DNA of 64,000 nucleotides from Chrysemys picta bellii (Eukaryota): assembly GCF_011386835.1 (NCBI RefSeq), contig NC_088809.1:12896001-12960000 (forward strand). The letters are read 5' to 3'. Of the stretch, positions 14,111-64,000 are shown in pieces. The notes under the pieces were generated by a model, which was given only the letters and a program-made list of their open reading frames with translations, was not told the origin of the DNA and searched no databases. How positions within the stretch are numbered: position 1 is the stretch's first letter; every line of letters begins with the position of its first letter. The translations under genes and the position numbers were made by a program.

Positions 14111-14234
14111 TTTATTATTTATTGTTACTAACAATAGAAAGATTTTACAACCTAAGACAATGGACACAACCAATCCCTCATGTAAAGATGAGAGGTAAAG
14201 CCCTCGGTTTATTGGCCTCTTCCCACCCTTTATT
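14111..14234 (-). terminator. MRPS17 polyadenylation signals (three AATAAA)
   Basis: Minus-strand AATAAA at 14229-14234 (overlaps the stop codon), 14208-14213 and 14111-14116. Confidence 0.5.
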
Positions 14235-15938
14235 TCTCTGTTGAGGAAACATTTAGTTCTTGGAGCTTTTCACTTAGATAGGTGGTGTCTGCCTCAGTTA
14301 GACTTTCTGAGTCTGTTAGACTTTCCAGGAACCTGGTTCCTGCGCAGGCCTTTCCAGTCACTGGGTCTATGACATTTCCAACCTTGAAAACAATCTCAGC
14401 CAGTTCATGTTTCACATTTTTGGTCCTCCGCTCAGGCAAAGCTTTTAGAAGAACAATGTCTCCGACGGCACAACTCTGCAATGGATCATGAGCGAAATAA
14501 GTTTTTCGCTTGTTAAAGAACTGTTGGAGAGAAGGAGAAAAGGAAACCCAGGCATTAGGACTCAAAACTAAAAGATGACCAGTAAACTTATGTTCAAAAG
14601 CAAAATGAATTGGAAGTTTCGTTATCAGGCTGATTGTGCAGGTATGCATAACTAACTGGGTTTTTGGCCAAGCAAAGCCACTGATGGATGCATATGGTAT
14701 AACAGTAGAACTGGGCAAATGTAACATTTGCTCTTCTTCACCCAGGATAGGTCTTTTGCCCTAGGTAGTGTCACTATTCACCAGTCCCTGACTCATCGAC
14801 TCCATTCTTGACCGCTAGTTACCTCTGGTTTATCATCTCAGTCCCTCCCATGCTTAAGAGGCACCAGAACGACAGTGCATCACATTCAGCAAAAAGGGTT
14901 GTCAAGGCTCTTCCAAGCCTAATAATAATTTGCATAAACTGCAGAGGGGAAGAGGTCAGGAAACTATATAATTCTCATCCTTCTCAATTCACCCAAGTCC
15001 CTATCACTGTGGTATTAGTGTTGCACCAATATCTCCCATATGAGCACATTTTAGTCCAGTTTTAGTAACTTTTATTGTCTGGGGAAAATATCAGGATTCA
15101 GACTATATCCTTTGAGAAGATTATGTAAATTATGATTGAAAAGTTGTGGAAAATGCACACTAAAAACAGAAAAGAGTCAATTACAAATCTAACCTACCTT
15201 CTTTTATCTTATAAAGTGCAGAATTGACTAAAGGGAGCATAGTTTCTCTTGAATCTAGTCTTTAATAATAACTGAGGGAGGCTTGCCTTATAAATAGTCC
15301 GATTATTTTATTATTGATAGATCTATATTGATTCAGTGGTTCAAATGCTAAAGAATATTTCTGCAATTACTTATTCAACAAAGTGGTTAGGAAAAAGATA
15401 TAGTAGGCAATTATTTTAATATCACCATATACAAAAACATTTTATTTTATAATTTCAAGCTTTCAAAATGGAGCAAAAACCCAGAAACTTATAAAAAATT
15501 TTTAAAAGGACTTTTCAAAAATCAAAGCACGAAATTAGTAGTCCACTTTCCCAGCTCAAATCAAAATGTGTGTTAACAGAATCATTCAAGGAAATGCACT
15601 TAATAGATAATCTGATACGGCAAATTTTATGTTTTTACACTGGTTTTTCTTTCTACGCAGTCATATTCAGAGCCAAATTACCACCCAATGTTCTTAATTA
15701 GTTAACAGTGTAAACAGTTTACATGAAATCCTAGTATTTCAGAAACTCAATACAATTTTCTTTGATAGTGAATATGAAAATGATCTTGCAAAGTAAGTTG
15801 GTGACCAGACCTTACCTTGAGTAAATAAGGATCCAGCACAAGCCTTGTCACTCTCACTTTGGCAGTTTTGTGCATTTTGGTTCCAATTACTTTCCCTATT
15901 ATCCATTTTGCATGGACAGCTCCACGTAGTCCAGACAT
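14230..15938 (-). CDS. MRPS17: Mitochondrial ribosomal protein uS17m (137 aa), two coding exons
   Basis: Coding exon A 15816-15938 ([41 protein letters not shown], acceptor at 15963 in the UTR, donor GTAAG). Exon B 14230-14520 ([61 protein letters not shown]...STEK*). Contains the S17 family signature. Confidence 0.97.
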
Positions 15939-26088: not shown

Positions 26089-26197
26089 ATGTCCATCAGG
26101 GGACTGAAGAAGAAGCAACCTAAGACTTTTAAAGTGAAAGTTATAACAATGGATGCTGAAATGGAGTTCAGCTGTGAGGTAAGCTTCCTGGAGGTGA

Positions 26198-26233
<36 letters not shown>

Positions 26234-39400: not shown

Positions 39401-42400
39401 GCCTACAAAAGCCACCATGATTGGTTCCAGTTGCCCCTGTGGAGAAGCCAAGGATTGAATGATCCATGAAGACTGAACTCTGTCTTCATTTACAGAGCTA
39501 GTGCCTCCATCCTGACCTGGAGGGACCATGGCAAGAGAGGGCATGTAGGGAGGCATTGGCATTTTCTACCTGCACTCTATCTGTTCTGTGAATAAGTAGA
39601 AGACTTCCATCTCCAGAGCTATAAATCCAGCACATTTCATAAAAGTTCAGTTGGCTTTAAAGAGATTACAGATCATCCCCCATACAAAGAAGGGTGTGTG
39701 TGTGTGGAGGGGAAGGTGTGAGAGAGAGCAATATTTCAGTTAACTGGAAGACTGATCAGGAGAAAACATCAGCACTGGAATCCCCAGGAATTAACAATAA
39801 AAGCGGAGCATAGTCTGTCCCTTTCTTTTCAATGAGTCCTTTCAAATTGGGGTCCAAATTCTGCTCTGGTGTAAATCCAAAGTTAGAGGTGTGCATGTAT
39901 TAAAACATTCATTATCTTCTACGATTCAAACACAGCCTTGCTTTGGGCAAGATGTTTGAATGACTGTTACCCACAGAGTAAAATGAGCTATAACCAGTTT
40001 TATTTATAATCTCAGTGAAACCGTATCTGAAATCAGATGACCGGCGCTGAGATTATGCAACAAAATGCAAATGAGTGAATCGGAATAGAGTGCTAATTCA
40101 TGAGTCACAGCAAAGGCCAGGATCTAAAAGAAGGGAGCTGCTTTTATTGTACTGTTGAGTTGAATTCAACATAGGAAGTGAAACACTGTGCTGGCCCCCT
40201 TGCAATATAGCCCTTTTTCACTTACCCCTCAGAAAACAATTTGGGAGATGGACTCTGAATAAGGAAAAGTTCCGTGAACGGGTCCTGATGTCCAGATTTT
40301 ATCCTTCAGGCCTTTTGTTGTGTATTTCCTGTTTGTTTGGTTTATAACCAGAGTTAGGGTGACCAGACAGCAAGTGTGAAAAATCGGAATGGGGGTTGGG
40401 GATAATAGGAGCCTATATAAGAAAAAGACCCAAAAATCGGGACTGTCTATAAAATCAGGACATCTGGTCACCCTAACCAGAGTGGTGTTGGATACTTCAC
40501 AAGGGCAGGCTTGGAGTGTTAAATTTGTTAAAAAGACAACTTCTAGAGATTAATAATAACTTCATTATAATGATGACCATTGAATTTGATGGCCTCAATC
40601 CAGTTCATCACAAAGCCACTGTCACAGCTGGCACTAACTGGTCCCATTGCTGGCAGCTTCAACTTCTAAAATCCCTTAGCAATCTGATTGCAGGACTGGA
40701 AACCAAGAACTCTTGTTGTCTAATCCCAACTCTGGCTCCGATTCTCTGAGGTCTCGAGCAATCATTAACGTCTTGCCTCAATTTCCCCTCTATGCTGCGG
40801 ATAATACTTTCACGTAGGTGTGGGTTCGTTATTGTCTGCTGTAGAAATAGTATTCAGTAGTTTCAACTTTTTATTGATCCAGACTTTTCTGCTTCCTTTT
40901 TTTTTTCCCAGCTAACTATTAAACCTCTTGATAAAAAAGCAGAAGTTTTCAAATTCTTTTCCTCGCAGCTCAAAGTGAACAAACTGGTAAGTGGGCTGCT
41001 GCTCTTTTAAAAAATCTGAATGTAGTAACAATTTCAGTTGCATTGATTGATATCAGAATGAGAAATCTTATTCAGGATACCGCCATGGTCATGTGTGTCA
41101 TGAGTATTGGTACTTAAGAGGCCTAAAGCCATAATAAAAATTAGTGTTGCAGTGATTTAGTGACAACCCAGGGTTGTGAGTTCAATCCTTGAGGGGGCCA
41201 CTTAGGGATCTGGGGCAAAATCAGTACTTGGTCCTGCTAGTGAAGGCAGGGGGCTGGACTCAATGACCTCTCAGAGTCCCTTCCAGTTCTAGGAGATGGG
41301 ATATCTCCATTAATTTATTTATTTTATTTTATAAAAATTAATGAGAGAAACTGGTCTACCATATTGTGCCCTACATGAGAGAACCCACCCGGGGACCAAG
41401 AAACTTTGTCTGTCTGAACACTTGCTTTTTTCCTCTTAAATTATTCTGTTTGTGGGTGACTTTGCCCTCTTTTTTTAGAATGGGCATGGGAGGAGACTCA
41501 CCAACTGTGTAAAAGACCAGAGAGCCACAGGGAAATCCTGCAGATCTAAGGCAAGGGCATTGTGGGAAGGCAGGATGCCCCCTTTGCTTCCTCAGGAGCG
41601 GTGCTTCTGTGGATTCTCATTTCCTCAAGGAACAACAAGGAAAGGGAAGCAGCATACGATACTGCTGACTGGGTTGCCGTTATCTTTCATTGAAATATCC
41701 CTATGGGATTGATGGGGGAAGACACCGGCTCAGTCCTCTCCCTAGCTAACCATATCCTTTCCCAACCTGCAGAGCCCTCATCTTATTATGCACCTGTGGA
41801 GGGTCTTCTGCAGATGACCTGCCATGCCACTACTGCTCTTCTCCCTCATATGCCCCCACCCCGACTAGTTCCATTTCCCTCTCTTACACCAGCAGAACTG
41901 GAGGAGAAATTGGTGCCAGAGAAGGTGACTGAATAAGGAAAGAGACTTTCAGCCTGTTCTGAACCTGTCCAAATCATATATTTGCTGACTAAAGATGTGC
42001 CTTACCTTGACTTGCTAGGCTAGAAACCTACAAAACTAATTGTCACTTTTATTGGAGGGGGAGGAATTGCTAGCTCCTGATGACTCTGAAGTTCGCCCCC
42101 AAGTAGGAGATGTGTTTGCATTCCTGTGCGGTGCTCTTCACCCAGCTCACTGCAACTCACTTGTGTTGCAATTGCTTTGCTTTTTGCAGATTTTACAGTT
42201 GTGCATTGGAAACCATGACTTGTTCATGAGAAGGAGAAAAGTGGACTCCATCGAGATCCAGCAAATGAAAGCTCAGGCCAGGGAGGAAAAGGCTAGAAAA
42301 AAAGTAGGTTCCTTCTGCTCCTTGTTGCTGAAAGTATTTATTATTCCATTCACTACACATATGTTATTCTTCACCCTACTTGTTCATATCATGAGCAGAG

Positions 42401-45400
42401 ATGAATTTGTGTATGTGTGTGTGCGCTCTCAGTGGTGTCTGTGTTGATGCATGTGGAGGGACTGAGAATATGAGCAGCTGTGGGAGGTGTGGAATGTCAG
42501 AGGATACAGTATGTGTGTTGTGCATGGGTGGTATCTGTGGTAGAGGGATGCTCATGTGTCACTCCTCCCTTTGTACTACACCTGCGCAAGTGCTCCATAT
42601 GGACAGCACTTTTAAATAACCAGGCTCACCAGCTGTCGGATTCAATACAGATGAACTGCCCTGGCAATTTGCAAGATGCCCTGATAGTAGCAAATAGCCG
42701 TGCAGCAGCCGGACAGCTTTCAGTTCTCTAGAAATATTTACCCAGTTTGCTCTGCAGTCCCAGTCGGTGAGCGTCACTCATTATCTTTCCAGATGGAGAC
42801 TCAAAGGCTGGCCAGGGAGAAGCAGCTCAGAGAAGAAGCAGAGCGAGCCAAAGAAGAGCTGGAAAGGCGCCTCTTCCAGATGGAAGATGAAGCCAGGCAA
42901 GCCAACGAGGCACTGGTGAGCATTGCAGTAGTCTGTGAATGTCATCTGGCCTTGGGCGAAGTCAAGATTTATTAGCTCCTTTTCCTGTGGCGTTAGCTAG
43001 GACACTGAGGGAATATCTGTACTGCAATTAAAAACCTATGGGACTGAGTCTCAGAGCCCAGGTCAATTGACTCTGGGTCACAGGGCTCAGGCTGCAGGGC
43101 TAAAAATTGCAGTGTAGCTGTTTGGGCTCGGGCTGGAACACAGGCTTTGAGACCCTCTGTCCTCATGGGGTCTCAGACCCCGGGTTCCAGCCCAAGTTCG
43201 AACATTGACACTGCAATTTTTAGCTCTGCAGCCTGAGTTGGCTGACCGGGGCCAGCCACGGCAATGCCACAGGTCTCTTATTGCAGTGTAGATGTGCCCT
43301 GAGGGTTATTGTTAAGGAAAGGAGGGAGATTTTCTGGGAGGCAGGGCATGCTTGCACTCTTGCAGGGAGCCAGGCCTGCCCCCAATCTCAATTTGCTGGG
43401 TACCATCCACTTCCCCCTGATTTTTCTGCCAACACCTTGTTCAGGCCTGGAGCCAGAGGGAGAGGAAAGCAGGCTGCATCAGGAACTGAAGCTGTGGAGA
43501 AGCCGGTAGCAGGTGGGACTGGTAGCTGAAAGGAGGCAGGCAGAGTTCACTAGGCTCTGCCCATTTGGGAGACGTCTTAGTCCAGTGCTGAGTAAAGGAG
43601 GAGAGGTCTTATACGATGGAAGGAGTGAAGGAGAGTGGAAGGCAAGAATACTGGAGCAGAGGGAGACTAGACATCCTGGAAATGTTTACTTGGCTCTAGG
43701 CCCTCAGTAAAGAGGGCTAAGGACGAATATAATGATCCTTGGTATGTTAAGGGTTAATATTATGATGATCTGCAGGGGAAAGACCTCCTGCTTCTAAGCT
43801 GACTCTAGCTATTTTTCCTTTCTAAATGTTGCATCATAGTAGCTAAGATAAATCCGGTCTCTTTCTAGCTCCGGTCCCAGGAAACAGCAGAGCTGCTGGC
43901 CGAGAAAGCTCAGATTGCAGAAGAAGAGGCCAAACTGCTGGCCCAGAATGCTGCAGAAGCTGAGCAAGAGCGGCAGAGGTTGGAGATCACAGCACTGAAA
44001 ACCAAGGAGGAGAAGCGTCTGATGGAGCAGAAGATGCGGGAGACAGAGCTGATTGCAGTAAAACTGGTGAAAGAGTCTGATCGAAGGTTAGATTTGCTCG
44101 TGGGTCTGGTGGGTGGCATCTGTCAGCCATGGCACTTGTGGATATACTGTGGGACTATCTTCCTAGAGTTTACGTGTGGAAGGAGGAATTCCCCAGGTGA
44201 CACTTCACAGCTTTGTGCATCTTGTTCATTCCCACCTTGTACCAGTGAATTTGAAATTAGTGCCAGAAATTTTAACAAAAATTGCATCCTCAGCTGTAGA
44301 GTTTTAACTGTAACTATGCAGCCACTCCTCCTTAGCATTATCGAAAGACTGAGGGCTACTAATGGAGAGTCTAAACGTAAATGTAAAGCCTTGTGAACGC
44401 TAGAACCATGCTAATTAGAAGAGTTTAAACTTATAAGCGGTTTGCAGGATTCTATTATGGGGTTCCTAACCCAGTGTAATGCACTTAATATAGACACTGT
44501 TGTAGATTATGTATATTCTATTGTTCGCACATGTATAGAATGCGAGGGCTCAGTGCTATCCTAAAATACAGGGCGTGCCTCATGTTATTTGTTGTTGTTA
44601 CAGGTATTTGTAAAGTTCTTATCACCCTGGTACCTGATGGCACTTTACTTATGCTAGTATGGTGTTAAACAACATTTTCCCAAAACAGGGAGCACTTGCT
44701 TGTCTGAAAAGTATCCCAAAGAGGATCTTTGATGTCAGATAATGGTTGAGGGCCCAGAGATTACAAGAACTGGGCCCATAGGAATTAGAGATAGAAAAGA
44801 TCTATTAAATCAGCCAGCTAATGCAGGACTGTTCCCGCAATCACCTCTTCTTGTGCTTTGTCCAGTTTACAATGTCCCATGCAATCAGGCTTTAACCTGT
44901 GGAGACTATTTCGAAGGCTAACGGATGTCTCTCAGGAAACCAGCTAGGTGTATGAACTCAGTGTGTTGCCACATGTTTGAAATCTACCACCTAACGTTCA
45001 CAATATGTTTGTCTGACAGAGCCAAAGAAGCTGAACATCTAAAACAGGATCTGCATGAAGCCAGGGAAGCTGAACGAAAAGCAAAGCAGAAACTTCTGGA
45101 TGTAACTAAGCTTAATTATCTTGTAAGTTACCCAGTTTACATTCTGGGCAGCCCTTTATTGGAGAGTGGACAAATAACCAATCATCATTTCAATGTAGAT
45201 ACAATGTAACTAACAAGTAAATACACATTATCCATGAAGCTTGCTCAAGACACTTTGTTACCAAGCTGATGTATTTGTAACCTCTTTGTACTTTGCAGTC
45301 TTTGGACTTCACAATTTTAACATATCATGACAATTTAAGGAATATCTATCTATCACCATCACTGTTAATCACGTAGCATACACAGTACCCAGAGATGTTT

Positions 45401-46940
45401 GCAATTTAAGGATACCTGGATGTCGTACTGACAGAAGTGAAATATGGAAACTGAGTGACATTGAGAGAACTTTAGGAAGGGCTCAGAAAAGGAGCTTTGT
45501 GGATGAAAACTTGTCTGCGGCTTCAAACTTCTTTTGTATGCTCCAGTATAGCAAAAGAGGGAATCTGCATTGTCAAAACAGAGGATTGGGACAGTCGGGT
45601 TCTACTCCGTTCTTTGCCACTGTGTCACTATGTGAACTAGGGCAAGCAATTTAGGGTAAAATTTTCAAAAGCGTCCGAGTCCCATTTTCAAAAGTGCCAG
45701 ACTCCTCAGTACTTTAGCTTTTATTTTTGTGAGCATAACCGGATAAGATGAAAGTTTCTTCCTCCTGGCCTGTGTTTAAAGTAAAGCTGTGGGCTTGCAC
45801 AGAAGCAGTATTTGCCACTGTGACCTGAGGTGCCAGGAGCAAATGCCATTACTCCTTCTTATGGGGAAGCCAATCTATGCACATGCTGCACTCTGTGTGA
45901 TATCCACGAAGTTTAAAAACTAGATGGGAAACATTCCAGCCATGCTGCTTCTCTCGCATTGGCACACAGTCTGTATGCATTGTAATGTATTTCATTGAAG
46001 GCTAACATTTTATTTCAAAAAGATTTGTTTAGGGCCAGCCAGCCAGGGAGGAAAGGGATATGAATGCCTACAGCCATCTTTAGAATCAATGGGAAGACAT
46101 CAATTTGGGAGACCGCGTGTGAGATTTTTGTAGAAGCTAGAAATATACTTGAAATTAAAAACAAATGTTCTAATTTTATTGTTAATGGAACAAACTCTTT
46201 TTTTGATTATCTTGCATCTTTTAGCATGTGGCCCGGTATCCTCATCATTCACCTGCTGACACCAGAGATGTCAACTTTGACAAAGGATCTGTAAAGATGG
46301 ATTTAAAAGATGTAGATCTGAAGAGACTGTCCTTTGAGATAGAAAGAGAGAGGTACTGGAACACTCCTAAGATGTAAATAAACTAGGGAGTCTTAACCTG
46401 GGAAATTAGAGGTGGAAAATACCGGTTATGTCTCCTGATGTATCCTCCTACCAGTGCAGGATTGTTCCCCACAATACATATGGGTGATTGCCTTATACAG
46501 AAGTAATAGCATCAGCTCTGTAACACATTAGCTTTTTAGAAGGAGAAAAGATGTTTTCTTGGCATCTAGCCATGAAGAGTACAGAGATCTGGGATTTAAA
46601 GGAATACATTGTCTAGGGGCAAAGCACTATGCTCTGATATGAGTATGCAGGAGGATGGAAACAACTGACTGGTGCATTGAGAGGGCTTTCCTTTCCTTTG
46701 CCCCATTGTAGACTGTATACTGGACTACGGGAACCATTGTTCTGTTATGGTCTTTCCTACATTCCTGTGAAAAGTGGCTTTAAAAATCTACCAAAAGACT
46801 ATTCAAAATGTTCCTAGATATTACACTTGCTTGCCAACACAGATCTTGGAGAATATCAAGTTGGTTCTGTGGCTATCTTGAATGTTAAAATGGTTTATAA
46901 GCTGCATTGTGGGCAAATGGACATAAAGTGGCAAGACTCA

Positions 46941-46974
<34 letters not shown>

Positions 46975-49348
46975 TTTCACTCCGCATGCACTATAAAGTA
47001 TGCTATGCTTTCATAGAGTTTATCGTCAGAAGAGCCCATTAGTCAGCTAGCCTAACTTCCTGTATATCACAGCCCAGATACCCCCATATGGAGCCAAATA
47101 ACTTCAGCATTATCGGTATCTGACTGATTGAAATGCATTAATGTTCTGATAGTACATTAGCTGACAATGCAAGGAGCTAGTACACTTATTTGCATCATGG
47201 TTGTGCCTAGGACCCCAGCCATGGACCAGGACTCCATTGTGCTAGGCAATGTCCAGTCACAAAACAAACAGATGGTCCCTGCCCCCAAAGAGCTTATGAT
47301 CTAAGTAGAAGACCAGAGACAACAGATGGATGCAGACAGACTTTGTCTTACCTATACCTATTGTGGGACCCTCTATGATTCTGCAGATTCCTATATAAAG
47401 CTGGTTCTCCAACTGTTTAATAACACCTAACAGGAGATTCTGTGTGTGACTGCTGGATTTCTAGTTGAAAGGGAGCAGGTCTTGCTGTGATCATCTGGAA
47501 GTAAATGTTTCTTCACAGGTTTCCCATGCAGCCCATAGCCTGAGCTTACATTTCTAACCATTCCCCTTTGTTCTGACTTCTCCCAGTTAAAGCAAACCTC
47601 CCTCCGCAAGCAGACCCAAATCTGTAAACTTCCTGCTGGTGCTGTCAGCAGTTCAGAATGAATGTAATGACAACGAAAGAGAAGTCAGGGTCACTGAAAG
47701 CCTTTCCCTGTAATGAAACAATTGGAGAACAGAGGTCCAGGCCCATTTGGAGCAAATATCAGACTAAATAAAATACAAATCGGATGAAGTTATTGACTGT
47801 CAGTTGAATAACTTCAAGTGTCAAATTAATTTCTGATGTAAGATAAGTGGATTTACAATGGGGATGGGTTTTGCCCCAGAAGCTATGAATGAAAATGTCT
47901 TACAAATTGCCCTTACAAAATAGATGAATGTAAAAACTACAAAACCCTCCTTTAGAATCATAGAATATCAGGGTTGGAAGGGACCTCAGGAGGTCATCTA
48001 GTCCAACCCCCTGCTCAAAGCAGGACCAATTCCCAACTAAATCATCCCAGACAGGGCTTTGTCAAGCCTGACCTTAAAAACCTCTAAGGATGGAGATTCC
48101 ACCACCTCCCTAGGTAACGCATTCCAGTGCTTCACCACCCTACTAGTGAAAAAGTTTTTCCTAATATCCAACCTAAACCTCCCCCACTGCAACTTGAGAC
48201 CATTACTCCTTGTTCTGTCATCAGGTATCACTGAGAACAGTCTAGATCCATCCTCTTTGGAACCCCCTTTCAGGTAGTTGAAAGCAGCTATCAAATCCCC
48301 CCTCATTCTTCTCTTCTGGAGACTAAACAATCCCAGTTCCCTCAGCCTCTCCTCATAAGTCATGTGCTCCAGCCCCCTAATCATTTTTATTGCGCTCCAC
48401 TGGACCCTTTCCAATTTTTCCACATCCTTCTTGTGGTGTGGGGCCCAAAACTGGACACAGTACTCCAGATGAGGCCTCACCAATGTCAAATAGAGGGGAA
48501 TGATCACGTCCCTTGATCTGCTGGCAATGCCCTTACTTATACAGCCCAAAATGCCATTAGCCTTCTTGGCAACAAGGGCACACTGTCGACTCATATCCAG
48601 CTTCTCGTCCACTGTAACCCCTACGTCCTTTTCTGTAGAACTGCTTCCTAGCCATTCGGTCCCTAGTCTGTAACAATGAATGGGACTCTTCCGTCCTACT
48701 TGCAGGACTCTGCACTTGTCCTTTAGAGCTACCACTGGCTAATTAGATTCATATTTTGTCGTCTTCTCTCCCTGTGTGGCTTGCAGGTTAGATTACTTGG
48801 AAAAGAGCAAAAAATTTGAAGATCGATTGAAAGAGCTGAAGTCAGAAATCCATGCACTGAAACTAGAGGAAAAACAAAATGGGCTCTACTCTCACTGGAA
48901 TGAAGTTCTTGGATCCTTGGATCGTTCAATAGGAAATGTATGTAACCCTAAATATAGGTTTTATAATAAGAATAACAGATAAGCTTACTCATGCAGTAGA
49001 AACTAATAAATATAGAAGGTTCAGTTAACACCATAAACAAAGGGACATTAGAATCCCTATAATGTTTCTAAAAGCATATGCTAAACATATACTTCATATT
49101 TTGGTATGAAACACACATTCACTCTCTCTATTGATAATAAAATGTGAAAAGTGGGTCTGGAGACATTAAAAGTGGCATTTTCCGCTGGAAGCGTTTTATG
49201 GGAGGAATCCCCTCAAATGTATAACAGTCAAAGATTGTGAGCTCCCAGGAAGAGTCCCATAAAGGTTGAAGGCTGTTGGGCAAAATAAGCTCTTGCAAGC
49301 TCAAAACAGTTAAATGTGGCATAGTTGTAATCAGTCTCTTTCTACTTC

Positions 49349-49408
<60 letters not shown>

Positions 49409-51179
49409 GTCAGCTTTTTATGCTAGATTCTTTTGATTTAGCAAACAAACTTTTGAGCCCCTTTCTGGACCGGTGCAACAGTAATAGGCCCCAGCCCTTC
49501 CAGATTTCTCCAAACCTAGTAGAAATTTGTCTTAGACTTAGAGTAACACACATTAGAGACAAAAAAGGGAGGCTTGGGTGAGAGAAGGCTCCTATAATTT
49601 CAGGTCCATGTATTTATGCCTTTGGCTTAACGTGAGCTGATGGAGTGAGAACACTATTTCACATATTCTGTCCTTTAAAGGCTCCCTCATGGATGAAAAC
49701 CTTTGGAGCTGGAGACTTGTTGGATATAAATCTTGGAAAGCCCTTCCCAGCTTATCCATTAAATGCCACAAGCAGCTGGCCATGTACCAACAAGAATCAA
49801 CATACAGTGCCTGTGGAAAAGTCAACTTTTCAAACAAATACCTTGGTTGCCAGCAATGTGGGGACAGGAACTAGAAAACAGATTATAAAGGTAATGGGAT
49901 TTATATGTATTTTCCCAACATGTGAATGAATTTAGTGCTTGTGAAAGTAAGGAATTAATAGGTTGGGCAAGCTTCTCCCACCCAACTCTGCCAGTGCCCC
50001 TCAATCCCAAACTGTGAAGGACTGCTAGTTATTCTAGTCCTTCAGTTTCATGCCATTTAAGGCAGCTTGTAAGATGGGCATCACAGGGGCTAGGATGAGA
50101 TCAGCTGACTCCATTCCACCTGTGATCAAAGCTGGACTATGAATGAAAGATAAATCCTGTTAGACAACAAGAGGATTTGTATTCAATAGCTGTATTTTCT
50201 TTATAGTTTGACCAAGCTTGAAAGTAAATTAATATGTCCTCAGTGCTGGCATCAACAGTTTAAAACCTAAACATGATTCCCTTCTGCACTAGTATTTATG
50301 GCTGTGAAAACCTAACTTCCAGCATTAAGGGGCAGGTAATAAGATACCAGTAACAGAAATTGACCAGACCGCCTACAATTCAGCTCTTATGTGGCAATGG
50401 TCATAGAACACCGCCGCTCTATCAGCTGTTTCACACCAGTGCTGTGTGGGTCCATGAGGGAGACCCTGTGTTCTTGTATGGTTGGCTCCTTCCATGCGAG
50501 TGAATACATTGGGGGGGGGATATAAAAGCTCAGTCTGCTTCTAGAGTTGACTAACTGGAGTGAGGATTGGAGGGGTGTAGGAATCCTATTCTGAATGTGA
50601 GACTAGTTTAAGGGCAGGCAACTGTTACTGAACAGTTACCAACAAGTAACTTTATTTATGCACTACTAATTGTGCTGGTTGCCCGAGAACTAACTGGAGG
50701 TTTAAAGGAACATTTGTCTGTGAATGAGGCTAGGGCAAGAGTTTCTATTCTATGATCAATAAACTTGAGCTGTGCTTCGTATATTTATGGTAAAGATTTT
50801 TCAGAATCACTAGAGACTGTCACATGACCTTAACTTGCAGACTGTAGGCATAGAATTGTAAGATACAAAGTCCAATGCGGTTGGACAGAAGCAGCATCTT
50901 CCTAATGCAAATAATAAGGTAATTGTTTTAAGAAAATAGAATCCAAACTGCAAAGTAATGTCTGTCAGTGTGAAAACTTCCATGGGGAAGACAGGAAAAA
51001 AAGTCAAGCAATTTTGATGTGACTTCCTCAAGGCCACAGAGTTGATGTCAAAGCCAAGCTTAAGAGCTAAGGAATTCCTGGCTCCCACTCATATGCTTAA
51101 ACAGAACTTTAGGGTGGAAATAACTTCTTTGATTTGCACGTAGGTTCAGCAGCAAGACTCGGACGTGATCTACATTTGA
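26089..51179 (+). CDS. NF2L: Merlin-like / NF2-like FERM protein (paralogue of NF2), 17 coding exons, 648 aa
   Basis: Exons: 26089-26178, 29348-29473, 29860-29982, 35259-35342, 36329-36397, 36655-36737, 37973-38048, 38948-39085, 40912-40986, 42190-42303, 42793-42915, 43869-44086, 45020-45122, 46225-46352, 48787-48937, 49681-49890, 51144-51179. They sum to 1947 nt with an open frame and all GT-AG. Exons 2-7, 9-12 and 14 have the same lengths as I recall for human NF2. Merlin-specific motifs: [28 protein letters not shown] (blue box), [22 protein letters not shown]. The last two exons are supported by splice sites and frame only. The symbol follows the name I recall for the chicken gene. Confidence 0.92.
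26203..26231 (+). repeat. (GA)n microsatellite
   Basis: About 14 GA units, contiguous with the left TSD of the hAT MITE. Confidence 0.9.
26234..26536. mobile_element. GC-rich hAT-family MITE in NF2-like intron
   Basis: TIRs CAGGAGCGGCTC / GAGCCGCTCCTG and a perfect 8-bp TSD GAGAGAAC (26226-26233, 26537-26544). Confidence 0.9.
26790..27150 (+). mobile_element. LF-SINE (ancient lobe-finned-fish SINE) remnant
   Basis: Matches the recalled consensus blocks TGGTCTCAGT.CAGTTCC.AGTGGA, CTCAGCAGAGAGGCCAAGGATTGAAT, GGTCCCTCCA and GGGAAGCTTG..CTGCC. Confidence 0.72.
30404..30448 (+). repeat. (GA)n(GT)n microsatellite
   Basis: Direct inspection. Confidence 0.85.
31398..31615 (+). mobile_element. MIR/CORE-type SINE
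   Basis: tRNA-like head (GCATAGTGCAGTAG...GAGTCAGGACTCTGGGGTTC) followed by core GGCAAGTTGCTTA..CTCTGTGCCTGTTTCCCCTAT. Similar fragments lie at about 2290-2430, 10590-10740, 24330-24470 and 38100-38330. Confidence 0.6.
38347..38707. mobile_element. GC-rich hAT-family MITE
   Basis: TIRs CAGGGCTGCCCAGA / TCTGGGCGGCCCTG, a perfect 8-bp TSD GGTCACCT (38339-38346, 38708-38715) and an internal duplicated subrepeat. Confidence 0.92.
40355..40475. mobile_element. hAT-family MITE (same family as 18844-18968, opposite orientation)
   Basis: TIRs TAGGGTGACCAGA / TCTGGTCACCCTA and a perfect 8-bp TSD ACCAGAGT. Confidence 0.92.
41165..41330 (+). mobile_element. Tortoise Pol III/SINE, 5'-truncated
   Basis: Starts at AACCCAGGGTTGTGAGTTCAATCC (B box only) and is otherwise like 16932-17119, ending in an (ATTT)n tail. 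Confidence 0.85.
43011..43288. mobile_element. Harbinger-type MITE, older
   Basis: Terminal GGGAATATCTGTACTGCAAT / ATTGCAGTGTAGATGTGCCC with internal inverted subrepeats. Confidence 0.65.
47953..48722 (-). mobile_element. Young 5'-truncated CR1 LINE with uninterrupted RT C-terminal frame
   Basis: 232-aa ORF 48037-48735 ([23 protein letters not shown]...[13 protein letters not shown]...FKVRLDKAL). CR1 3' terminal repeat (ATTCTATGATTCTA on the minus strand) at 47953-47966. Candidate TSD TCCTTTAG (47948-47955, 48719-48726). Confidence 0.95.
49351..49400 (+). repeat. (TG)25 microsatellite
   Basis: Perfect 50-nt TG run followed by (AG)4. Confidence 0.95.
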
Positions 51180-54100
51180 AGCGTCTCTGCAATTCAGTAA
51201 TGCTTTCATCAAGAAGTGAATAGGCAGAACTTCGGAGTAATCCATTTGGCTGCCACAAGTTACTTACACAAAACCACTACATACCTTTAGCTACTCGATG
51301 TCAGCATCAAAACATATCCTGTAATGAGAGTGTGGTGCTGCTCAGTGTCCAGAGAGGCAGCGTATGCCTGTAGCACTGAAAATGACAAGCATCTTTCATA
51401 GTGGCAAACGTGAAATAATATAAGAGCCAAGTTACATCATTTGTGTTTCGTGAGAACATTTTACATTTAAAATGCCTTTTATCCTAAAGTGCTTTTTAAA
51501 CTACAGAGCACCGCTGAAATACAGGACCTTTTAAAGCAAAGAGAGTAGCAAATAGTCAGTGGAACACACTGGGGGAGGAGGAGATGTTTAGGAAAATTCC
51601 TGCTTTTATAAAAAAATTTACACAGAGCACACATGACTTTATGTTTTTAAGTCTTAGCAGCTGGTGGGACACTTCTAAAGCCTGTTTCAGCATAGTTAGT
51701 CCACAGAACATTTTTCACTTCTTATCCCTAAACATAACAGACTGTCCACATACTTGACTTGTATTTCTATTAGAGACAGTCCAATCCTAAATTTAGAATT
51801 AAGAGCTAGACAGGCTTTTTTGGTAGGTCTTAATACATCTATTTTGATGTCTCATGGAGATATGAATGAATCCTTAGTGTGGAAGTGCAAGGCTTCTGTT
51901 TCTATATGGTTTTTGTGATAGTGTGGAATACCTTTGTTGCTGCCACCTGTAGAAGACTGCATAACTTACTGGCTCAGAGAAGTTTAAGTACTAGAGACAA
52001 AGGACACCTAACTGGTATCTGCTAAAGAGGGACTCGTCTCTGATGAAGACTAAACATGGTATCTACCACCCAGCATCTACTTTATCAGTAGAACCACTTT
52101 ATACTTGAGGATGTTGTGCATTAAATGTATATTTAACTGAGATCTTCATACAGACTTCTATGGAAGTAGACAATACAAAATTGTAGCTAAAATATGTTGA
52201 ACATGCAGGACAGAGTAAAAATGGATGTTAATGTTCATAAACATCTACTCCTATAAGTTAAAAATCTAAAGTATATTGAATAAAGCTTCAATTCCTTCTA
52301 GCTGTCAGCTTTTTAAATGTGTATGTGTATATATTGCTTGGATTTAGCTTTAAAGGCAGAGTATGAACTACTGAAAGTTTTTCAGCTCTGAGCACTGACA
52401 AGGTAGGTGTACTACATGTGCTTCTTTACTAGTCTTCATCTCTACTTCCTCACTTAACTTGCTTATCCTCTAAACAGCAAGTTGACAATTAAAACCTCTA
52501 CATGTATCTTCTGGAAAAGAAATTGATTTGTATCCATATTCAGGAAAACACTGTGCAAGGAAGTACAGGTGTTAGTTGAAGTAGAGCTGAAAGTCAACAC
52601 ATGGGCTAGTCAACAACTTTAATAAGGTTTATTTTGATGTTGTCAGCCATTCTTCCTGACCCATAAATACTAAACAAACCAACTGTACATAAATTACAAA
52701 AAATCAAAAAGGAACTCCCTCTACTAAGAAAAAACCTGAACAATTCACCCAAATTCTAGAGAAGGCTTTACATGGAAATAGACTCCCCCCCTCCCTCCCC
52801 TCCCCAAGTTTGTGAACTGGATTCTGCTAAATTATGCAACTCCTCTTTCTCCTGCTAGCTCCCAAGTTTGCTCTTCAGAAACTATGCTTTATCCCTAAAG
52901 AAAAACAGCTCTAATCATTATGGATGCAGTGATGGCTGAAGCTGTCGGCAACCCAAAACACTAGATAAGAGTAATGAATTGCCCAGTTAATCTCAATGGG
53001 ATATTGATACTGATAAGTATCTTTGGTGCTCAACCATCTCAAAGATGAGCACAATCAATGGCTTATCAACATGGGGAAATGTGCCAGCTTAACTGTACTA
53101 GTATAGTTTGTGTGTAGCCACTTAGTCTAATGTATGTCCACATAAGAAGACATGGCAGCAAAATCACACAGGTAATTTCAATTTTCAAAATGCTTAATGA
53201 CTAAGGAACCCATATCCCACTGACTATCAGTGGGACTTAAACTCCAATGCAACTTAAGTACTTTTACATTTCTTATTGGCCTCCCCTGCAATCTGACCCA
53301 TGAACAAGCTCAGGCTGTCAAACTAAAGGGGAGGTAAATTCCTGAGGGGCACAGAGGGGCTTTGCTAGGTACTTGTGTGTTAGTTTATAACTACAACAAA
53401 CAGATATTGCTATCATCATCTAGGTCTTCACAGAAACTGTATGCATCAAATCAGAGGACAGCTGACACCTGTCACAAAATACATATGCCACTTCCCTCTA
53501 GGAGGCAGCAAGTGACCACAGTACTGGCTCATCCCCTAAACTAGGAAACAGAAATGGTACCAAACAACTAATGCATATTTTGCTGCATCATACTACTGTC
53601 ACAGAAGTTGATGTTTAATGCCAAGGGCTCCATTTAAACTCCATGTTTATCCTTGAACAATCCATGGATGGGTAGGCCAAGTTAATATCATTTACTCTTT
53701 CCCCACTATTGTGTATTCTGCCTCAGGAAGTATGAATACATCTTAGAGCTGCTTAGCTGTATTATTCATATACTATCTTGTTTGAAAAACTGTACTGTAA
53801 TTTTAGCAAAGTAGTTTAGAGTGCTGTCTTCTGCAGCAGGTGGGTTGGTAGAAAGTGTGTGTGGACATCAGCAAGACACACAAAGGGTTGAACATGAAGA
53901 TACTAGAGAGGTTTAAAGCATTTTGGCTTTTATCTTGGATAAGGAAAGGAACATATACAAGTCCAGCAGGGGAAAACTAAGGTACGCTGGGAGCTTCTCT
54001 ATCTCAAGGAGCAGATTCCTTTACCTAGTCTAGATCAGGTTTATTTTAGTAGTGAATTTTTGCATATTTTGGGAGCACAGCTTCAGCCTCACAGAAGCAT

Positions 54101-54789: not shown

Positions 54790-61700
<6,911 letters not shown>

Positions 61701-62423: not shown

Positions 62424-63756
62424 ATGGGTAAGTACTATTGTGTAGAGATACCTGATGATTTTTAGGGGATCGTTGTAGTTAGTGCCTTGACAGAGGATAT
62501 AGCTCTTATTAAACTGAAACGACACTGATTTAACCGCAAAAAGAACAGGAGTACTTGTGGCACCTTAGAGACTAACATAATATGTTATGCATCCAAAGAA
62601 GTGGGCAGTAGCCCACGAAAGCTTATGCTCTAATAAATTTGTTAGTCTCTAAGGTGCCACAAGTACTCCTGTTCTTTTTGCGGATACAGACTAACACGGC
62701 TGCTACTCTGAAAACTGATTTAACCATAACACATCAGGAATAACCTGTTGTCCTGCTGCTCCCAGCAAGGTGGGAACGGGCTCACTTGCTTGCTACTGTT
62801 AGGTCTGCGTGCAACACACATTCAATTGCTTATTCTTTTAAAAAGAAGTCAAATTAGTGCCAAGCCTGGAAGGGGTGACCCCTGTGACCAATATCTTGAA
62901 ACCTTAGGGCTGCTGGGACCACTCGAGTGCAGGTTGGCTTTACAAATAGAAATGAGATTGGAACATGTCTCTGGTGGAAACACCCAGAGTGAAATCTGTT
63001 AGTATCAGAGAAATGTAGAAAACAATAATATAAAGGTAACCCTGAATTACTGCTGTGCCTTTCTCCAGTGGTGCTCCTGGGGAAGCACCTCTGAGCCAGC
63101 TAATGTTGGCTTTCGGGTGTTAATTTCCAGCCAGGGTTCAAGGGTGTTAATTACAGGCAGCTGAATGTATCTTAGGCTAGGTCTACACTACCCGCCTGAA
63201 TTGGCGGGTAGAAATCGACCTCTCGGGGATCGATTTATTGCGTCCCATCGGGACGCGACAATCGATCCCCGAATCGACGCTCTTACTCCATCAGCGGAGG
63301 TGGGAGTAAGCGCCGTCGACAGAAAGCCGCAGAAGTCGATTTTGCCGCCGTCCTCACAGCGGGGTAAGTCGGCTGCGATACGTCGAATTCAGCTACGCTA
63401 TTCACGTAGCTGAATTTGCGTATCTTAAATCGACTCCCCCCTGTAGTGTAGATGTACCCTTAAACTCCACAAAGGGAAGGTGTGTGTGATTGGGAGCAGT
63501 GAGCAACGGGAGAGGTGTAGGATGCTGTTTCTGCCGCTATATTGATGATGAAGGAAACTGCTGCTGCTTTTGCTGAGTTGGAAGAGGGCAGTCATGATTT
63601 ATTATCATTTTAGATGCATCAGCGGATACTTGGAGCTACTTCTACACTCATCTGATGTCCATATGGCTAAACAGGTTTTACATCTACTCTTGTGCGGCTT
63701 TTGGCATTGGTATTTGGATCTGCTTTCAGTTCATTGCCACCAAAGCCAAAAAGCAG
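62424..63756 (+). CDS. TYW1: tRNA wybutosine-synthesizing protein 1 (radical SAM), N-terminus only; continues beyond the right edge
   Basis: gccATGG|gtaagt at 62424-62427 splices to exon 63614-63756, giving MDASADTWSYFYTHLMSIWLNRFYIYSCAAFGIGIWICFQFIATKAKKQ. This resembles the human TYW1 N-terminus (MDPSADTW...LWINRFYIYLG) with its hydrophobic anchor. It is head-to-head with SBDS as in mammals. Confidence 0.9.
62536..62713. mobile_element. Penelope-like inverted pLTR unit in TYW1 intron; hammerhead core mutated (CCAAAGA)
   Basis: 42-bp perfect inverted arms (62536-62577, 62640-62681) plus tail. Flanking duplication ACTGATTTAACC (62524-62535, 62714-62725). Confidence 0.85.
63175..63459. mobile_element. 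CpG-rich PIF/Harbinger-type MITE
   Basis: TIRs GGCTAGGTCTACACTAC / GTAGTGTAGATGTACCC with a perfect TTA target duplication. Confidence 0.85.
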
Positions 63757-64000
63757 GTAAGTGAGACTCACAATTCTAGCATTTATATTCTTTCAACTGG
63801 CAGTATACAACAGTAATCCTTTAACCCACTACTGAAATGTATCCTCCTTTGGTGTGGGAGTGTGGCATTTCATTTCAGTATAGTCCACTCTAGGCCATGT
63901 GCAAGTTCTAACTTCTTAAAGTTTAAATGTGGTTTGGCATCCTCGAAAATCATAGTACTTGACGTGTGTTAGAAATATAACAAAAACATACCTGTTGACT

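What the first reader, a model, noticed from the sequence alone, without database searches (positions are those of the whole stretch)
26089..51179. A second, intact merlin gene: probable 2R ohnologue of the NF2 tumour suppressor
Seen in the sequence: a fully open 17-exon, 648-aa merlin-type gene with NF2-identical intron positions through most of the FERM and helical domains. It lies next to NIPSNAP2. Established (recalled): human NF2 is flanked by NIPSNAP1 and CABP7, and CALN1 (the CABP7 paralogue) follows TYW1 in mammals. Inference: NIPSNAP2-NF2L-(SBDS-TYW1)-CALN1 and NIPSNAP1-NF2-CABP7 are a whole-genome-duplication paralogon, so this is not NF2 but its sister, retained in sauropsids and absent from human and mouse. 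Pipelines probably label it merlin-like, so its existence may not be new. Its function, a possible second upstream Hippo input or backup tumour suppressor in long-lived turtles, is to my knowledge uncharacterised.
Basis: partly seen in the sequence, partly recalled or inferred. Interest (0 to 1): 0.78.

Follow-up and report, generated by a model that had tools for sequence, protein, structure and literature searches.

The report
Known second merlin gene (NF2L/merlin1)
The turtle window holds an intact, expressed second merlin gene that arose as an ancient sister of the NF2 tumour suppressor and was later lost in most placental mammals, but it was published in 2019 as "merlin1", is annotated as "merlin-like", and is called nf2b in fish.

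Summary
A 17-exon, 648-aa open merlin-type gene lies at 26089-51179 on the + strand. Every intron is GT..AG, and the first 11 intron positions match canonical NF2.

The window is 100% identical to Chrysemys picta bellii CM062336.1. RefSeq already annotates the gene there as "merlin-like".

A maximum-likelihood tree gives two clades that each span the jawed vertebrates: NF2/nf2a and NF2L/nf2b, both with full support. The window gene sits with the turtle NF2L sequences. A tetrapod-only duplication is rejected (p-AU 3.5e-5).

- The window reads NIPSNAP2, MRPS17, NF2L, SBDS, TYW1.
- Sparrow NF2 has a NIPSNAP1-type gene 6 kb upstream.
- Pipefish nf2b is followed by CALN1.

The gene is constrained (dN/dS 0.107) and spliced transcripts exist in three runs from two studies.

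It is not new. Shabardina et al. 2019 described it as "merlin1", lost in Eutheria except armadillos. Its fish orthologue, zebrafish nf2b, has been studied functionally.

One detail may be new. The tetrapod protein lacks the isoform-1 tail. It ends in an 11-residue exon placed like NF2 exon 16 (isoform 2), after a disordered 70-aa insert. Polypterus nf2b still makes both tails.

The scan also noted this tail separately (s1-328315).

The parts
26089..26178 (+). NF2L exon 1 (start codon, 30 codons; 8 residues shorter than NF2)
   Evidence: GT donor
29348..29473 (+). exon 2 (126 nt, FERM F1)
   Evidence: 74.6 bits to solved merlin FERM
29860..29982 (+). exon 3 (123 nt)
35259..35342 (+). exon 4 (84 nt)
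36329..36397 (+). exon 5 (69 nt)
36655..36737 (+). exon 6 (83 nt; blue-box region YQMTADM)
37973..38048 (+). exon 7 (76 nt)
38948..39085 (+). exon 8 (138 nt, one codon longer than NF2)
40912..40986 (+). exon 9 (75 nt)
41479..41550 (+). optional 24-codon cassette exon of RefSeq isoform X1 (AG acceptor, GC donor)
42190..42303 (+). exon 10 (114 nt)
42793..42915 (+). exon 11 (123 nt, helical domain)
43869..44086 (+). exon 12 (218 nt, helical domain)
45020..45122 (+). exon 13 (103 nt, one codon shorter than NF2)
46225..46352 (+). exon 14 (128 nt; holds the Ser518-equivalent, KRLSFEIE)
   Evidence: its 3' end is the loose end joined to exon 15 in RNA contigs
48787..48937 (+). exon 15 (151 nt; first half of the C-ERMAD helix)
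49681..49890 (+). exon 16 (210 nt; tetrapod-specific 70-aa insert, predicted disordered)
   Evidence: joint 48937>49681 in 3 runs; pLDDT under 50; the '68-aa insertion' of PMC6978628
51144..51179 (+). exon 17 (11 codons [11 protein letters not shown] plus stop; isoform-2-like tail)
   Evidence: joint 49890>51144 in 3 runs; tail conserved across tetrapods and Polypterus
51180..52300 (+). 3' UTR, with AATAAA at 52279
   Evidence: RNA contigs run to 52225-52273; signal found
3346..10103 (-). 5' part of NIPSNAP2 (context; exons at 3346-3655, exon 1 near 10005-10103)
14233..14760 (-). MRPS17 last exon (context)
   Evidence: Ribosomal_S17 gene at the same place in L. kempii
54790..60939 (-). SBDS (context)
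63598..63813 (+). open stretch holding the first coding exon of TYW1 (context)
   Evidence: identified from my recollection of the TYW1 N-terminus

Best explanation
This is the painted-turtle copy of the vertebrate gene variously called merlin1, NF2L, 'merlin-like' or (in fish) nf2b. It arose with canonical NF2 from one ancestral merlin gene by a large-scale duplication before the jawed vertebrates split, most likely one of the 2R genome duplications. The duplication also produced NIPSNAP1/NIPSNAP2 and CABP7/CALN1. The gene is intact, transcribed, correctly spliced and under purifying selection. Its protein keeps a merlin-type FERM domain (78% identical to mouse merlin), including the K79/K80, K269/E270 and K278/K279 positions recalled as merlin's PIP2-binding residues. 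It also keeps most of the blue box, the long helical domain, the Ser518-type site and the first C-ERMAD helix. It lacks the second half of the C-ERMAD and the isoform-1 tail. Instead it carries a disordered, tetrapod-specific 70-aa insert and a strongly conserved 11-residue end (..DSDVIYI). That end sits where NF2's isoform-2 exon 16 sits. Inferred mechanism: a membrane-cortex FERM scaffold that acts upstream of Hippo/YAP in partial redundancy with NF2, as zebrafish nf2a/nf2b do. In tetrapods it would be fixed in an isoform-2-like form that cannot close head-to-tail through the isoform-1 tail, with the conserved C-terminal peptide acting as a short docking motif. Shown here: identity, age of the duplication, linkage, expression and constraint. 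Inferred: Hippo role, open state, motif function.
For: Gene model. Identity with annotated C. picta 'merlin-like': 100% DNA identity over 45 kb, and the protein is identical apart from a 24-aa cassette. Tree: both clades starred; AU test against a tetrapod-only duplication. Both genes occur in one turtle species, on different records of two haplotype assemblies. Linkage. dN/dS Chrysemys vs Lepidochelys: 0.107 overall, 0.04 in the FERM domain. Spliced contigs joining exons 14-15-16-17 plus the 3' UTR: three runs, two studies, two organism labels. Domains: the three FERM lobes and ERM_helical pass; ERM_C covers only profile positions 3-40 of 77, against 2-77 in turtle NF2. Conserved residues. 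Tail: Polypterus nf2b isoforms end either ..VYLEDV or ..DSEVIYI after the same upstream sequence. In turtle NF2 the isoform-2 exon lies 2.3 kb after exon 15, as the NF2L tail exon does. No FFEEL-type exon lies between exon 15 and SBDS. AF2 gives pLDDT under 50 for residues 549-648. Literature: PMC6978628 (merlin1); PMC11646113 and PMC12749930 (nf2a/nf2b phenotypes). The published nf2b guide encodes KVKVST, the cyprinid NF2L-type signature, and the nf2a guide encodes MGLSLR, the canonical type.
Against: No cyclostome, amphioxus or tunicate sequences were in the tree; the outgroups were four long-branched ecdysozoans. So 2R is not separated from an earlier or local duplication. The tail homology with NF2 exon 16 rests on 11 residues: same length, same place, and a shared I-[CY]-I end. 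No functional data exist for any tetrapod NF2L. The AF2 model is poor overall (mean pLDDT 65, pTM 0.26) and cannot show an open or closed state. The runs are only guessed to be RNA, although intron-free contigs with GT..AG joints are hard to explain otherwise. Betta nf2a is flanked by tescalcin-like and F-box genes, not CABP7, so the paralogon is rearranged in teleosts.
Confidence: 0.88

Rival explanations
1. The two merlin genes come from an ancient small-scale (segmental) duplication that copied a few neighbouring genes, not from a whole-genome duplication.
For: Only two linked paralogue pairs were shown here (NIPSNAP1/2, and CABP7/CALN1 by recall for the NF2 side). PMC6978628 reports only one syntenic pair within 1 Mb between the two merlin regions.
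Against: The split predates the chondrichthyan/osteichthyan divergence and follows the invertebrate outgroups, which is the 2R window. From memory, many further 22q12 / 7q11 pairs exist (LIMK2/LIMK1, YWHAH/YWHAG, CASTOR1/CASTOR2). Pipefish nf2b lies among claudin genes and a methyltransferase gene that resemble the 7q11.23 set.
Confidence: 0.1
2. It is a recent, lineage-specific duplicate of NF2, or NF2 itself.
For: Same exon plan and 75-78% identity in the FERM and helical domains.
Against: The window gene lies in the NF2L/nf2b clade (100/99). Uniting tetrapod copies is rejected at p-AU 3.5e-5. Turtle canonical NF2 is 97% identical to mouse merlin in the FERM domain and lies elsewhere.
Confidence: 0.01
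3. It is an annotated but decaying or silent gene.
For: The C-terminal part evolves faster (dN/dS 0.26-0.45, on few changes). The Tamandua copy has a long branch.
Against: The ORF is open in many turtles, dN/dS is 0.107 overall against about 10% intron divergence, and spliced transcripts are present.
Confidence: 0.01

Closest known systems
Vertebrate merlin1 of Shabardina et al. 2019 (Genome Biol Evol, PMC6978628); RefSeq 'merlin-like'; chicken chromosome 19 copy
   Same: It is the same gene. It has the tetrapod C-terminal insertion the paper gives as 68 aa (70 codons here), a shorter N-terminus, a retained blue box and Ser518, and little similarity to the last 30 residues of NF2. It is present in reptiles, birds, monotremes, marsupials and Xenarthra and is lost in other Eutheria.
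   Different: Nothing essential differs. Added here: the exact turtle exon model, RNA splice evidence, dN/dS, the NIPSNAP2/MRPS17/SBDS/TYW1 context, and the isoform-2-like reading of the last exon.
Zebrafish / fish nf2b
   Same: It is the orthologue by tree, by the N-terminal signature ([17 protein letters not shown]) and by the published guide sequence. It is expressed and acts with nf2a in growth control and regeneration (PMC11646113, PMC12749930).
   Different: Teleost and sturgeon nf2b end in an isoform-1-like ..MAF[FY]EEV tail and lack the 70-aa insert. Tetrapod NF2L ends in ..DSDVIYI. Recent zebrafish papers call nf2a/nf2b fish-specific duplicates or two orthologues of NF2, which the tree contradicts.
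Canonical NF2 (merlin), especially isoform 2
   Same: Same exon plan for the first 11 introns, FERM plus helical architecture, Ser518 site, and an 11-residue alternative tail exon about 2.3 kb after exon 15 ending I-[CY]-I.
   Different: It is a different locus and clade. Identity is 78% in the FERM domain but only 40% in the C-terminal domain. Half of the ERM_C profile is missing, there is no isoform-1 tail exon, and there is an extra 70-aa exon.
ERM proteins (ezrin, radixin, moesin)
   Same: FERM, helical and C-ERMAD family.
   Different: Exon 2 scores 74.6 bits to merlin and 41-48 bits to ERM proteins. NF2L lacks the part of ERM_C that in ERM proteins holds the C-terminal actin-binding site (from general knowledge; ERM_C coverage).

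Membership tests
Merlin/ERM family (FERM, helical, C-ERMAD) | Three-lobed FERM domain (FERM_N, FERM_M, FERM_C) | tested here: met
   Pfam on P0163 (98% identical to the window protein): 51, 103 and 78 bits, all above cut-off
Merlin/ERM family (FERM, helical, C-ERMAD) | Long alpha-helical domain | tested here: met
   ERM_helical 77 bits; AF2 gives a single helix at 309-458 with pLDDT up to 94
Merlin/ERM family (FERM, helical, C-ERMAD) | Complete C-ERMAD (ERM_C) | tested here: not met
   Only profile positions 3-40 of 77 match (28.7 bits); turtle NF2 matches 2-77 (93.5 bits)
Merlin subfamily (as against ERM) | Closer to merlin than to ERM in sequence and tree | tested here: met
   74.6 vs 48 bits or less; inside the vertebrate merlin clade, 98/99, with invertebrate merlins as outgroup
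Merlin subfamily (as against ERM) | Blue box and Ser518-type site | tested here: met
   YQMTADM vs YQMTPEM (5 of 7); KRLSFEIE vs KRLSMEIE
NF2 orthologue group (canonical merlin, merlin2, nf2a) | Falls in the NF2 clade and lies beside NIPSNAP1 | tested here: not met
   It lies in the sister clade. Its neighbours are NIPSNAP2, MRPS17, SBDS and TYW1
NF2L / merlin1 / nf2b orthologue group | Falls in the NF2L/nf2b clade | tested here: met
   100/99 clade; nearest sequence is Caretta NF2L at 98%
NF2L / merlin1 / nf2b orthologue group | Tetrapod C-terminal insertion (given as 68 aa in PMC6978628; 70 codons here) and weak similarity to the NF2 tail | tested here: met
   Exon 16 (70 codons) plus an 11-residue end
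2R ohnologue pair | Duplication dated between invertebrate chordates and jawed vertebrates, on paralogous chromosome blocks | tested here: inconclusive
   The split predates the jawed vertebrates and two flanking gene pairs are paralogous. No cyclostomes, invertebrate chordates or chromosome-scale synteny were available

The most novel reading that the evidence does not exclude
The ancestral vertebrate merlin gene already had two alternative 3' exons: an 11-residue '..I[CY]I' tail and a 15-16-residue '..AFFEEL' tail. After the NF2/NF2L duplication, NF2 and Polypterus nf2b kept both. Teleost nf2b kept only the isoform-1 type. Tetrapod NF2L kept only the isoform-2 type and gained a disordered 70-aa exon. 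Tetrapod NF2L would then be a natural, constitutive 'isoform-2-only' merlin whose conserved DSDVIYI end is a docking motif. As a corollary, zebrafish nf2b, the dominant paralogue in embryos, is not a co-orthologue of human NF2 but the orthologue of a gene that most placental mammals lost. That bears on how zebrafish NF2 models are read.
Probability: 0.55. Interest if true: 0.4.

Novelty: already known. Interest (0 to 1): 0.25.

Why it matters
The gene's existence, distribution and loss in Eutheria are published and annotated, so the finding itself adds little.

It still matters in three modest ways:
- NF2 biology is built almost wholly on species that lack this paralogue. In birds, reptiles, amphibians, marsupials and fish, a second merlin may buffer or modify NF2 loss.
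- Recent zebrafish papers still treat nf2a/nf2b as fish-specific duplicates. The tree and the published guide sequences show that nf2b is the NF2L orthologue.
- Tetrapod NF2L looks like a natural isoform-2-only merlin. That could help settle how the C-terminal tail controls merlin's open and closed states.

Nothing here supports a special link to turtle longevity.

Tried and rejected
- **Homologue search route.** A spliced protein has no reference in these tools. I therefore seeded the big representative search with exon 2 alone and went on from the full-length hit P0018.
- **A hit left aside.** One representative (P0021) looked like a primate intron-retaining model with Alu-like translation. 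I did not compare it or search for more of it.
- **Look-ups that found nothing.** The look-up of encoding contigs had no record for P0314, P0323, P0220 and P0221, which are not the longest products of their genes. As a result I could not map the order of the two tail exons in Polypterus.
- **Turtle NF2 neighbours.** The 10-kb flanks of L. kempii NF2 hold no called gene, so NIPSNAP1 linkage was shown in sparrows instead.
- **Betta nf2a neighbour.** The EF-hand gene beside it is tescalcin-like, not CABP7, and tblastx between the two EF-hand genes found nothing. CABP7 beside NF2 therefore rests on recalled human data.
- **Isoform-1 tail exon.** A motif scan and tblastn with fish and invertebrate tails over 48-56 kb found nothing above noise.
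- **AF2 model.** It is too weak (pTM 0.26) to judge FERM-tail docking, so I ran no fold search.
- **Earlier notes.** The search of earlier findings held no note on a canonical NF2, NIPSNAP1 or CABP7 window in this genome.
- **Third protein search.** I did not use it. It cannot be aimed at cyclostomes.
Full report
**Observation**

Stop-free stretches on the + strand between 26 and 51 kb carry merlin-like peptides in order. I anchored each on its splice sites. I then defined the divergent 3' exons with a full-length homologue, P0018.

The result is 17 exons from 26089 to 51179. The coding sequence is 1947 nt, which gives 648 residues and one terminal stop. All 16 introns are GT..AG.

Eleven of the first fifteen exons have the lengths I recall for human NF2. 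Exon 2 alone scores 74.6 bits to solved merlin FERM domains and 41-48 bits to ERM proteins. The window contains no N.

**Source and annotation**

A look-up of the Chrysemys picta bellii protein 'merlin-like isoform X1' (P0395) returned a locus on CM062336.1 (GCA_011386835.2). That locus is 100% identical to window 16089-61179 over 45,091 bases.

P0395 equals my 648-aa model plus a 24-residue cassette at 41479-41550, which has an AG acceptor and a GC donor. So the gene is already annotated.

**Is it NF2 or a sister?**

The word search with P0018 returned NF2L-type proteins from many groups:
- marsupials, monotremes and an anteater;
- birds, turtles, crocodilians and squamates;
- a caecilian;
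- fish proteins named nf2b, and chondrichthyan proteins.

A second search returned canonical NF2 (nf2a in fish) from the same range of taxa.

I built a careful IQ-TREE analysis of 49 sequences. It recovers NF2/nf2a (100/98) and NF2L/nf2b (100/99) as sister clades, with four invertebrate merlins as outgroup. Each clade follows the species tree from chondrichthyans upward. The window protein groups with Caretta and Pelodiscus.

An AU test rejects a tree that unites all tetrapod copies (lnL difference 191.9, p-AU 3.5e-5).

Lepidochelys kempii carries both genes, seen in two of its assemblies. Canonical NF2 lies on OZ223601.1 of GCA_965140265.1, a record of 33.6 Mb. NF2L lies on OZ223575.1 of GCA_965140285.1, a record of 27.2 Mb.

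Against mouse merlin, identities differ sharply between the two turtle genes:

| Region | Turtle NF2L | Turtle NF2 |
|---|---|---|
| FERM | 78% | 97% |
| Helical domain | 74.5% | 97% |
| C-terminal domain | 40% | 79% |
| Last 17 residues | 18% (3 of 17 aligned; no real match) | 94% |

**Linkage**

The window reads, in order:
- NIPSNAP2, minus strand, exons at 3346-3655 and exon 1 near 10.1 kb;
- MRPS17, minus strand, 14233-14760;
- NF2L, plus strand;
- SBDS, minus strand, 54790-60939;
- TYW1, plus strand, first coding exon near 63.6 kb.

L. kempii shows MRPS17, NF2L and SBDS in the same order.

In two sparrow assemblies a NIPSNAP gene lies about 6.4 kb upstream of canonical NF2, in divergent orientation. 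Its peptide is the NIPSNAP1 type (SWFRSLFVHKVD...) and is 78% identical to the window's NIPSNAP2 exon.

In the pipefish, nf2b is followed within 4 kb by a 218-aa EF-hand gene. Its exons read as calneuron-1 (MPFHHV......RQTCVRKSLICAFAMAFIISVMLIAANQ...), identified from my recollection of CALN1. Upstream of nf2b lie claudin genes and a methyltransferase gene that resemble the 7q11.23 set.

The CABP7 side rests on recalled human data. Betta nf2a lies beside tescalcin-like and F-box genes instead.

**Expression and constraint**

Contigs from three runs, covering two studies and two organism labels, lack the introns. They join 48937 to 49681 and 49890 to 51144 at GT..AG. They begin with the last bases of exon 14 and continue through a 1.1-kb 3' UTR to 52225-52273. 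An AATAAA signal lies at 52279.

One of these contigs is 3.2 kb and extends 1.76 kb upstream of exon 15, which is enough for the whole coding sequence. A fourth run holds a form that reads on from exon 15 into intron 15. The runs are only guessed to be RNA, but intron-free contigs are hard to explain otherwise.

I rebuilt the L. kempii coding sequence exon by exon, and it translates exactly to P0392. dN/dS against the window breaks down as follows:

| Region | dN/dS |
|---|---|
| Whole coding sequence | 0.107 |
| FERM | 0.04 |
| Helical domain | 0.06 |
| Exons 14-15 | 0.26 |
| Exons 16-17 | 0.45 (few changes) |

Divergence across the aligned gene region, which is mostly intron, is about 10%.

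**What the protein is**

Pfam finds FERM_N, FERM_M, FERM_C and ERM_helical. It finds only the first half of ERM_C (profile positions 3-40 of 77), whereas turtle NF2 matches positions 2-77.

Several residues known from merlin are kept:
- K79/K80, K269/E270 and K278/K279;
- T230 and S315;
- the Ser518 context;
- 5 of 7 blue-box residues.

The N-terminus is 8 residues shorter than in NF2.

The AF2 model is weak overall (mean pLDDT 65, pTM 0.26). It shows a confident long helix at 309-458 and a second helix at 501-547. Residues 549-648 have pLDDT under 50, so the insert and the tail are predicted to be disordered.

**The tail**

Canonical NF2 across bony vertebrates ends in one of two ways. Isoform 1 ends in LTLQSTKSRVAFFEEL. 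Isoform 2 ends in an 11-residue tail such as PQAQGRRPICI.

In turtle NF2 the isoform-2 exon lies 2.3 kb after exon 15, and the isoform-1 exon lies 14.6 kb further on.

Polypterus and Erpetoichthys nf2b have two isoforms that share everything up to ..YFPISR. They then end either WNPEALTSTVYLEDV or VGHYDSEVIYI. Teleost and sturgeon nf2b end ..MAF[FY]EEV. All tetrapod NF2L proteins that reach the last exon, more than 60 in all, end ..DSDVIYI or a near variant.

In the window the 11-codon tail exon lies 2.2 kb after exon 15. No FFEEL-type exon is detectable before SBDS.

I infer that the two-tail arrangement predates the duplication and that tetrapod NF2L kept only the isoform-2 type. This rests on a short motif plus its position, so it is a hypothesis.

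**Comparison with what is known**

Shabardina et al. (PMC6978628) described this paralogue as 'merlin1'. Their description covers:
- presence in most vertebrates and loss in Eutheria except armadillos;
- a 68-aa insertion in tetrapods;
- the PPYxPHSNRNSAYMx motif in bony fish;
- a kept blue box and Ser518;
- weak similarity in the last 30 residues;
- faster evolution than NF2.

They did not name the flanking paralogues. I found no statement in their text that attributes the merlin split to 2R.

I found no later functional work on tetrapod merlin1.

For fish, the nf2b guide published in PMC12749930 encodes KVKVST, the cyprinid NF2L-type signature. The nf2a guide encodes MGLSLR, the canonical type. 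So zebrafish nf2b is the NF2L orthologue.

Zebrafish work gives the following:
- nf2b is the dominant paralogue in embryos;
- double nf2a/b knock-out gives schwannomas and meningiomas;
- nf2b crispants show a regeneration defect that is worse with nf2a loss.

The same papers call the pair fish-specific duplicates or two orthologues of NF2. The tree contradicts that.

**Verdict**

The gene is already known and annotated, and nothing ties it to turtle biology in particular.

Two points add modestly to the record: the isoform-2-like tail reading, and the mislabelling of nf2b in the zebrafish literature.

Noticed in passing
window 41479-41550 (+): A 24-codon cassette exon in intron 9 with a GC donor. 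It is present in RefSeq isoform X1 (672 aa) but not in the 648-aa form shared with other turtles. It would insert into the FERM F3/helix junction.
   Followed up: partly
window 48785-49341 (+): One run (X1) holds a contig that joins exon 14 to exon 15 and then reads on into intron 15. This gives the alternative end ..[16 protein letters not shown], like the Chelonia protein P0218.
   Followed up: partly
window 48037-48735 (-): A 232-aa open frame with the look of a CR1/LINE reverse-transcriptase C-terminal part, inside NF2L intron 14.
   Followed up: no
window 60174-60850 (+/-): A GC-rich stretch (65% GC) between SBDS exon 1 and TYW1 contains a tandemly repeated proline-rich unit (..[25 protein letters not shown]..) that is open in several frames. 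It is probably a repeat in the shared CpG-island promoter.
   Followed up: no
window 26190-26560 and 38300-38770: GC-rich stretches that are open in several frames, inside NF2L introns 1 and 7. They start just after a (GA)n run at the exon 1 donor and were not compared with each other. The only CpG-rich stretch near the 5' end is 26000-26500 (observed/expected 0.72).
   Followed up: no
P0156 and P0159 (Dromiciops gliroides): Two different full-length NF2L-type proteins (648 and 649 aa) on different large contigs. This may be a marsupial-lineage extra copy.
   Followed up: no
P0215 (Tamandua tetradactyla): The only eutherian NF2L in the lists has a very long branch (0.53 against a median of 0.06). 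This suggests relaxed constraint in Xenarthra, the one eutherian group that kept the gene.
   Followed up: no
L005 2301-9291 (Syngnathus acus): Four tandem claudin genes and a UbiE-type methyltransferase gene lie just upstream of nf2b. They resemble the human 7q11.23 (Williams region) gene set.
   Followed up: no
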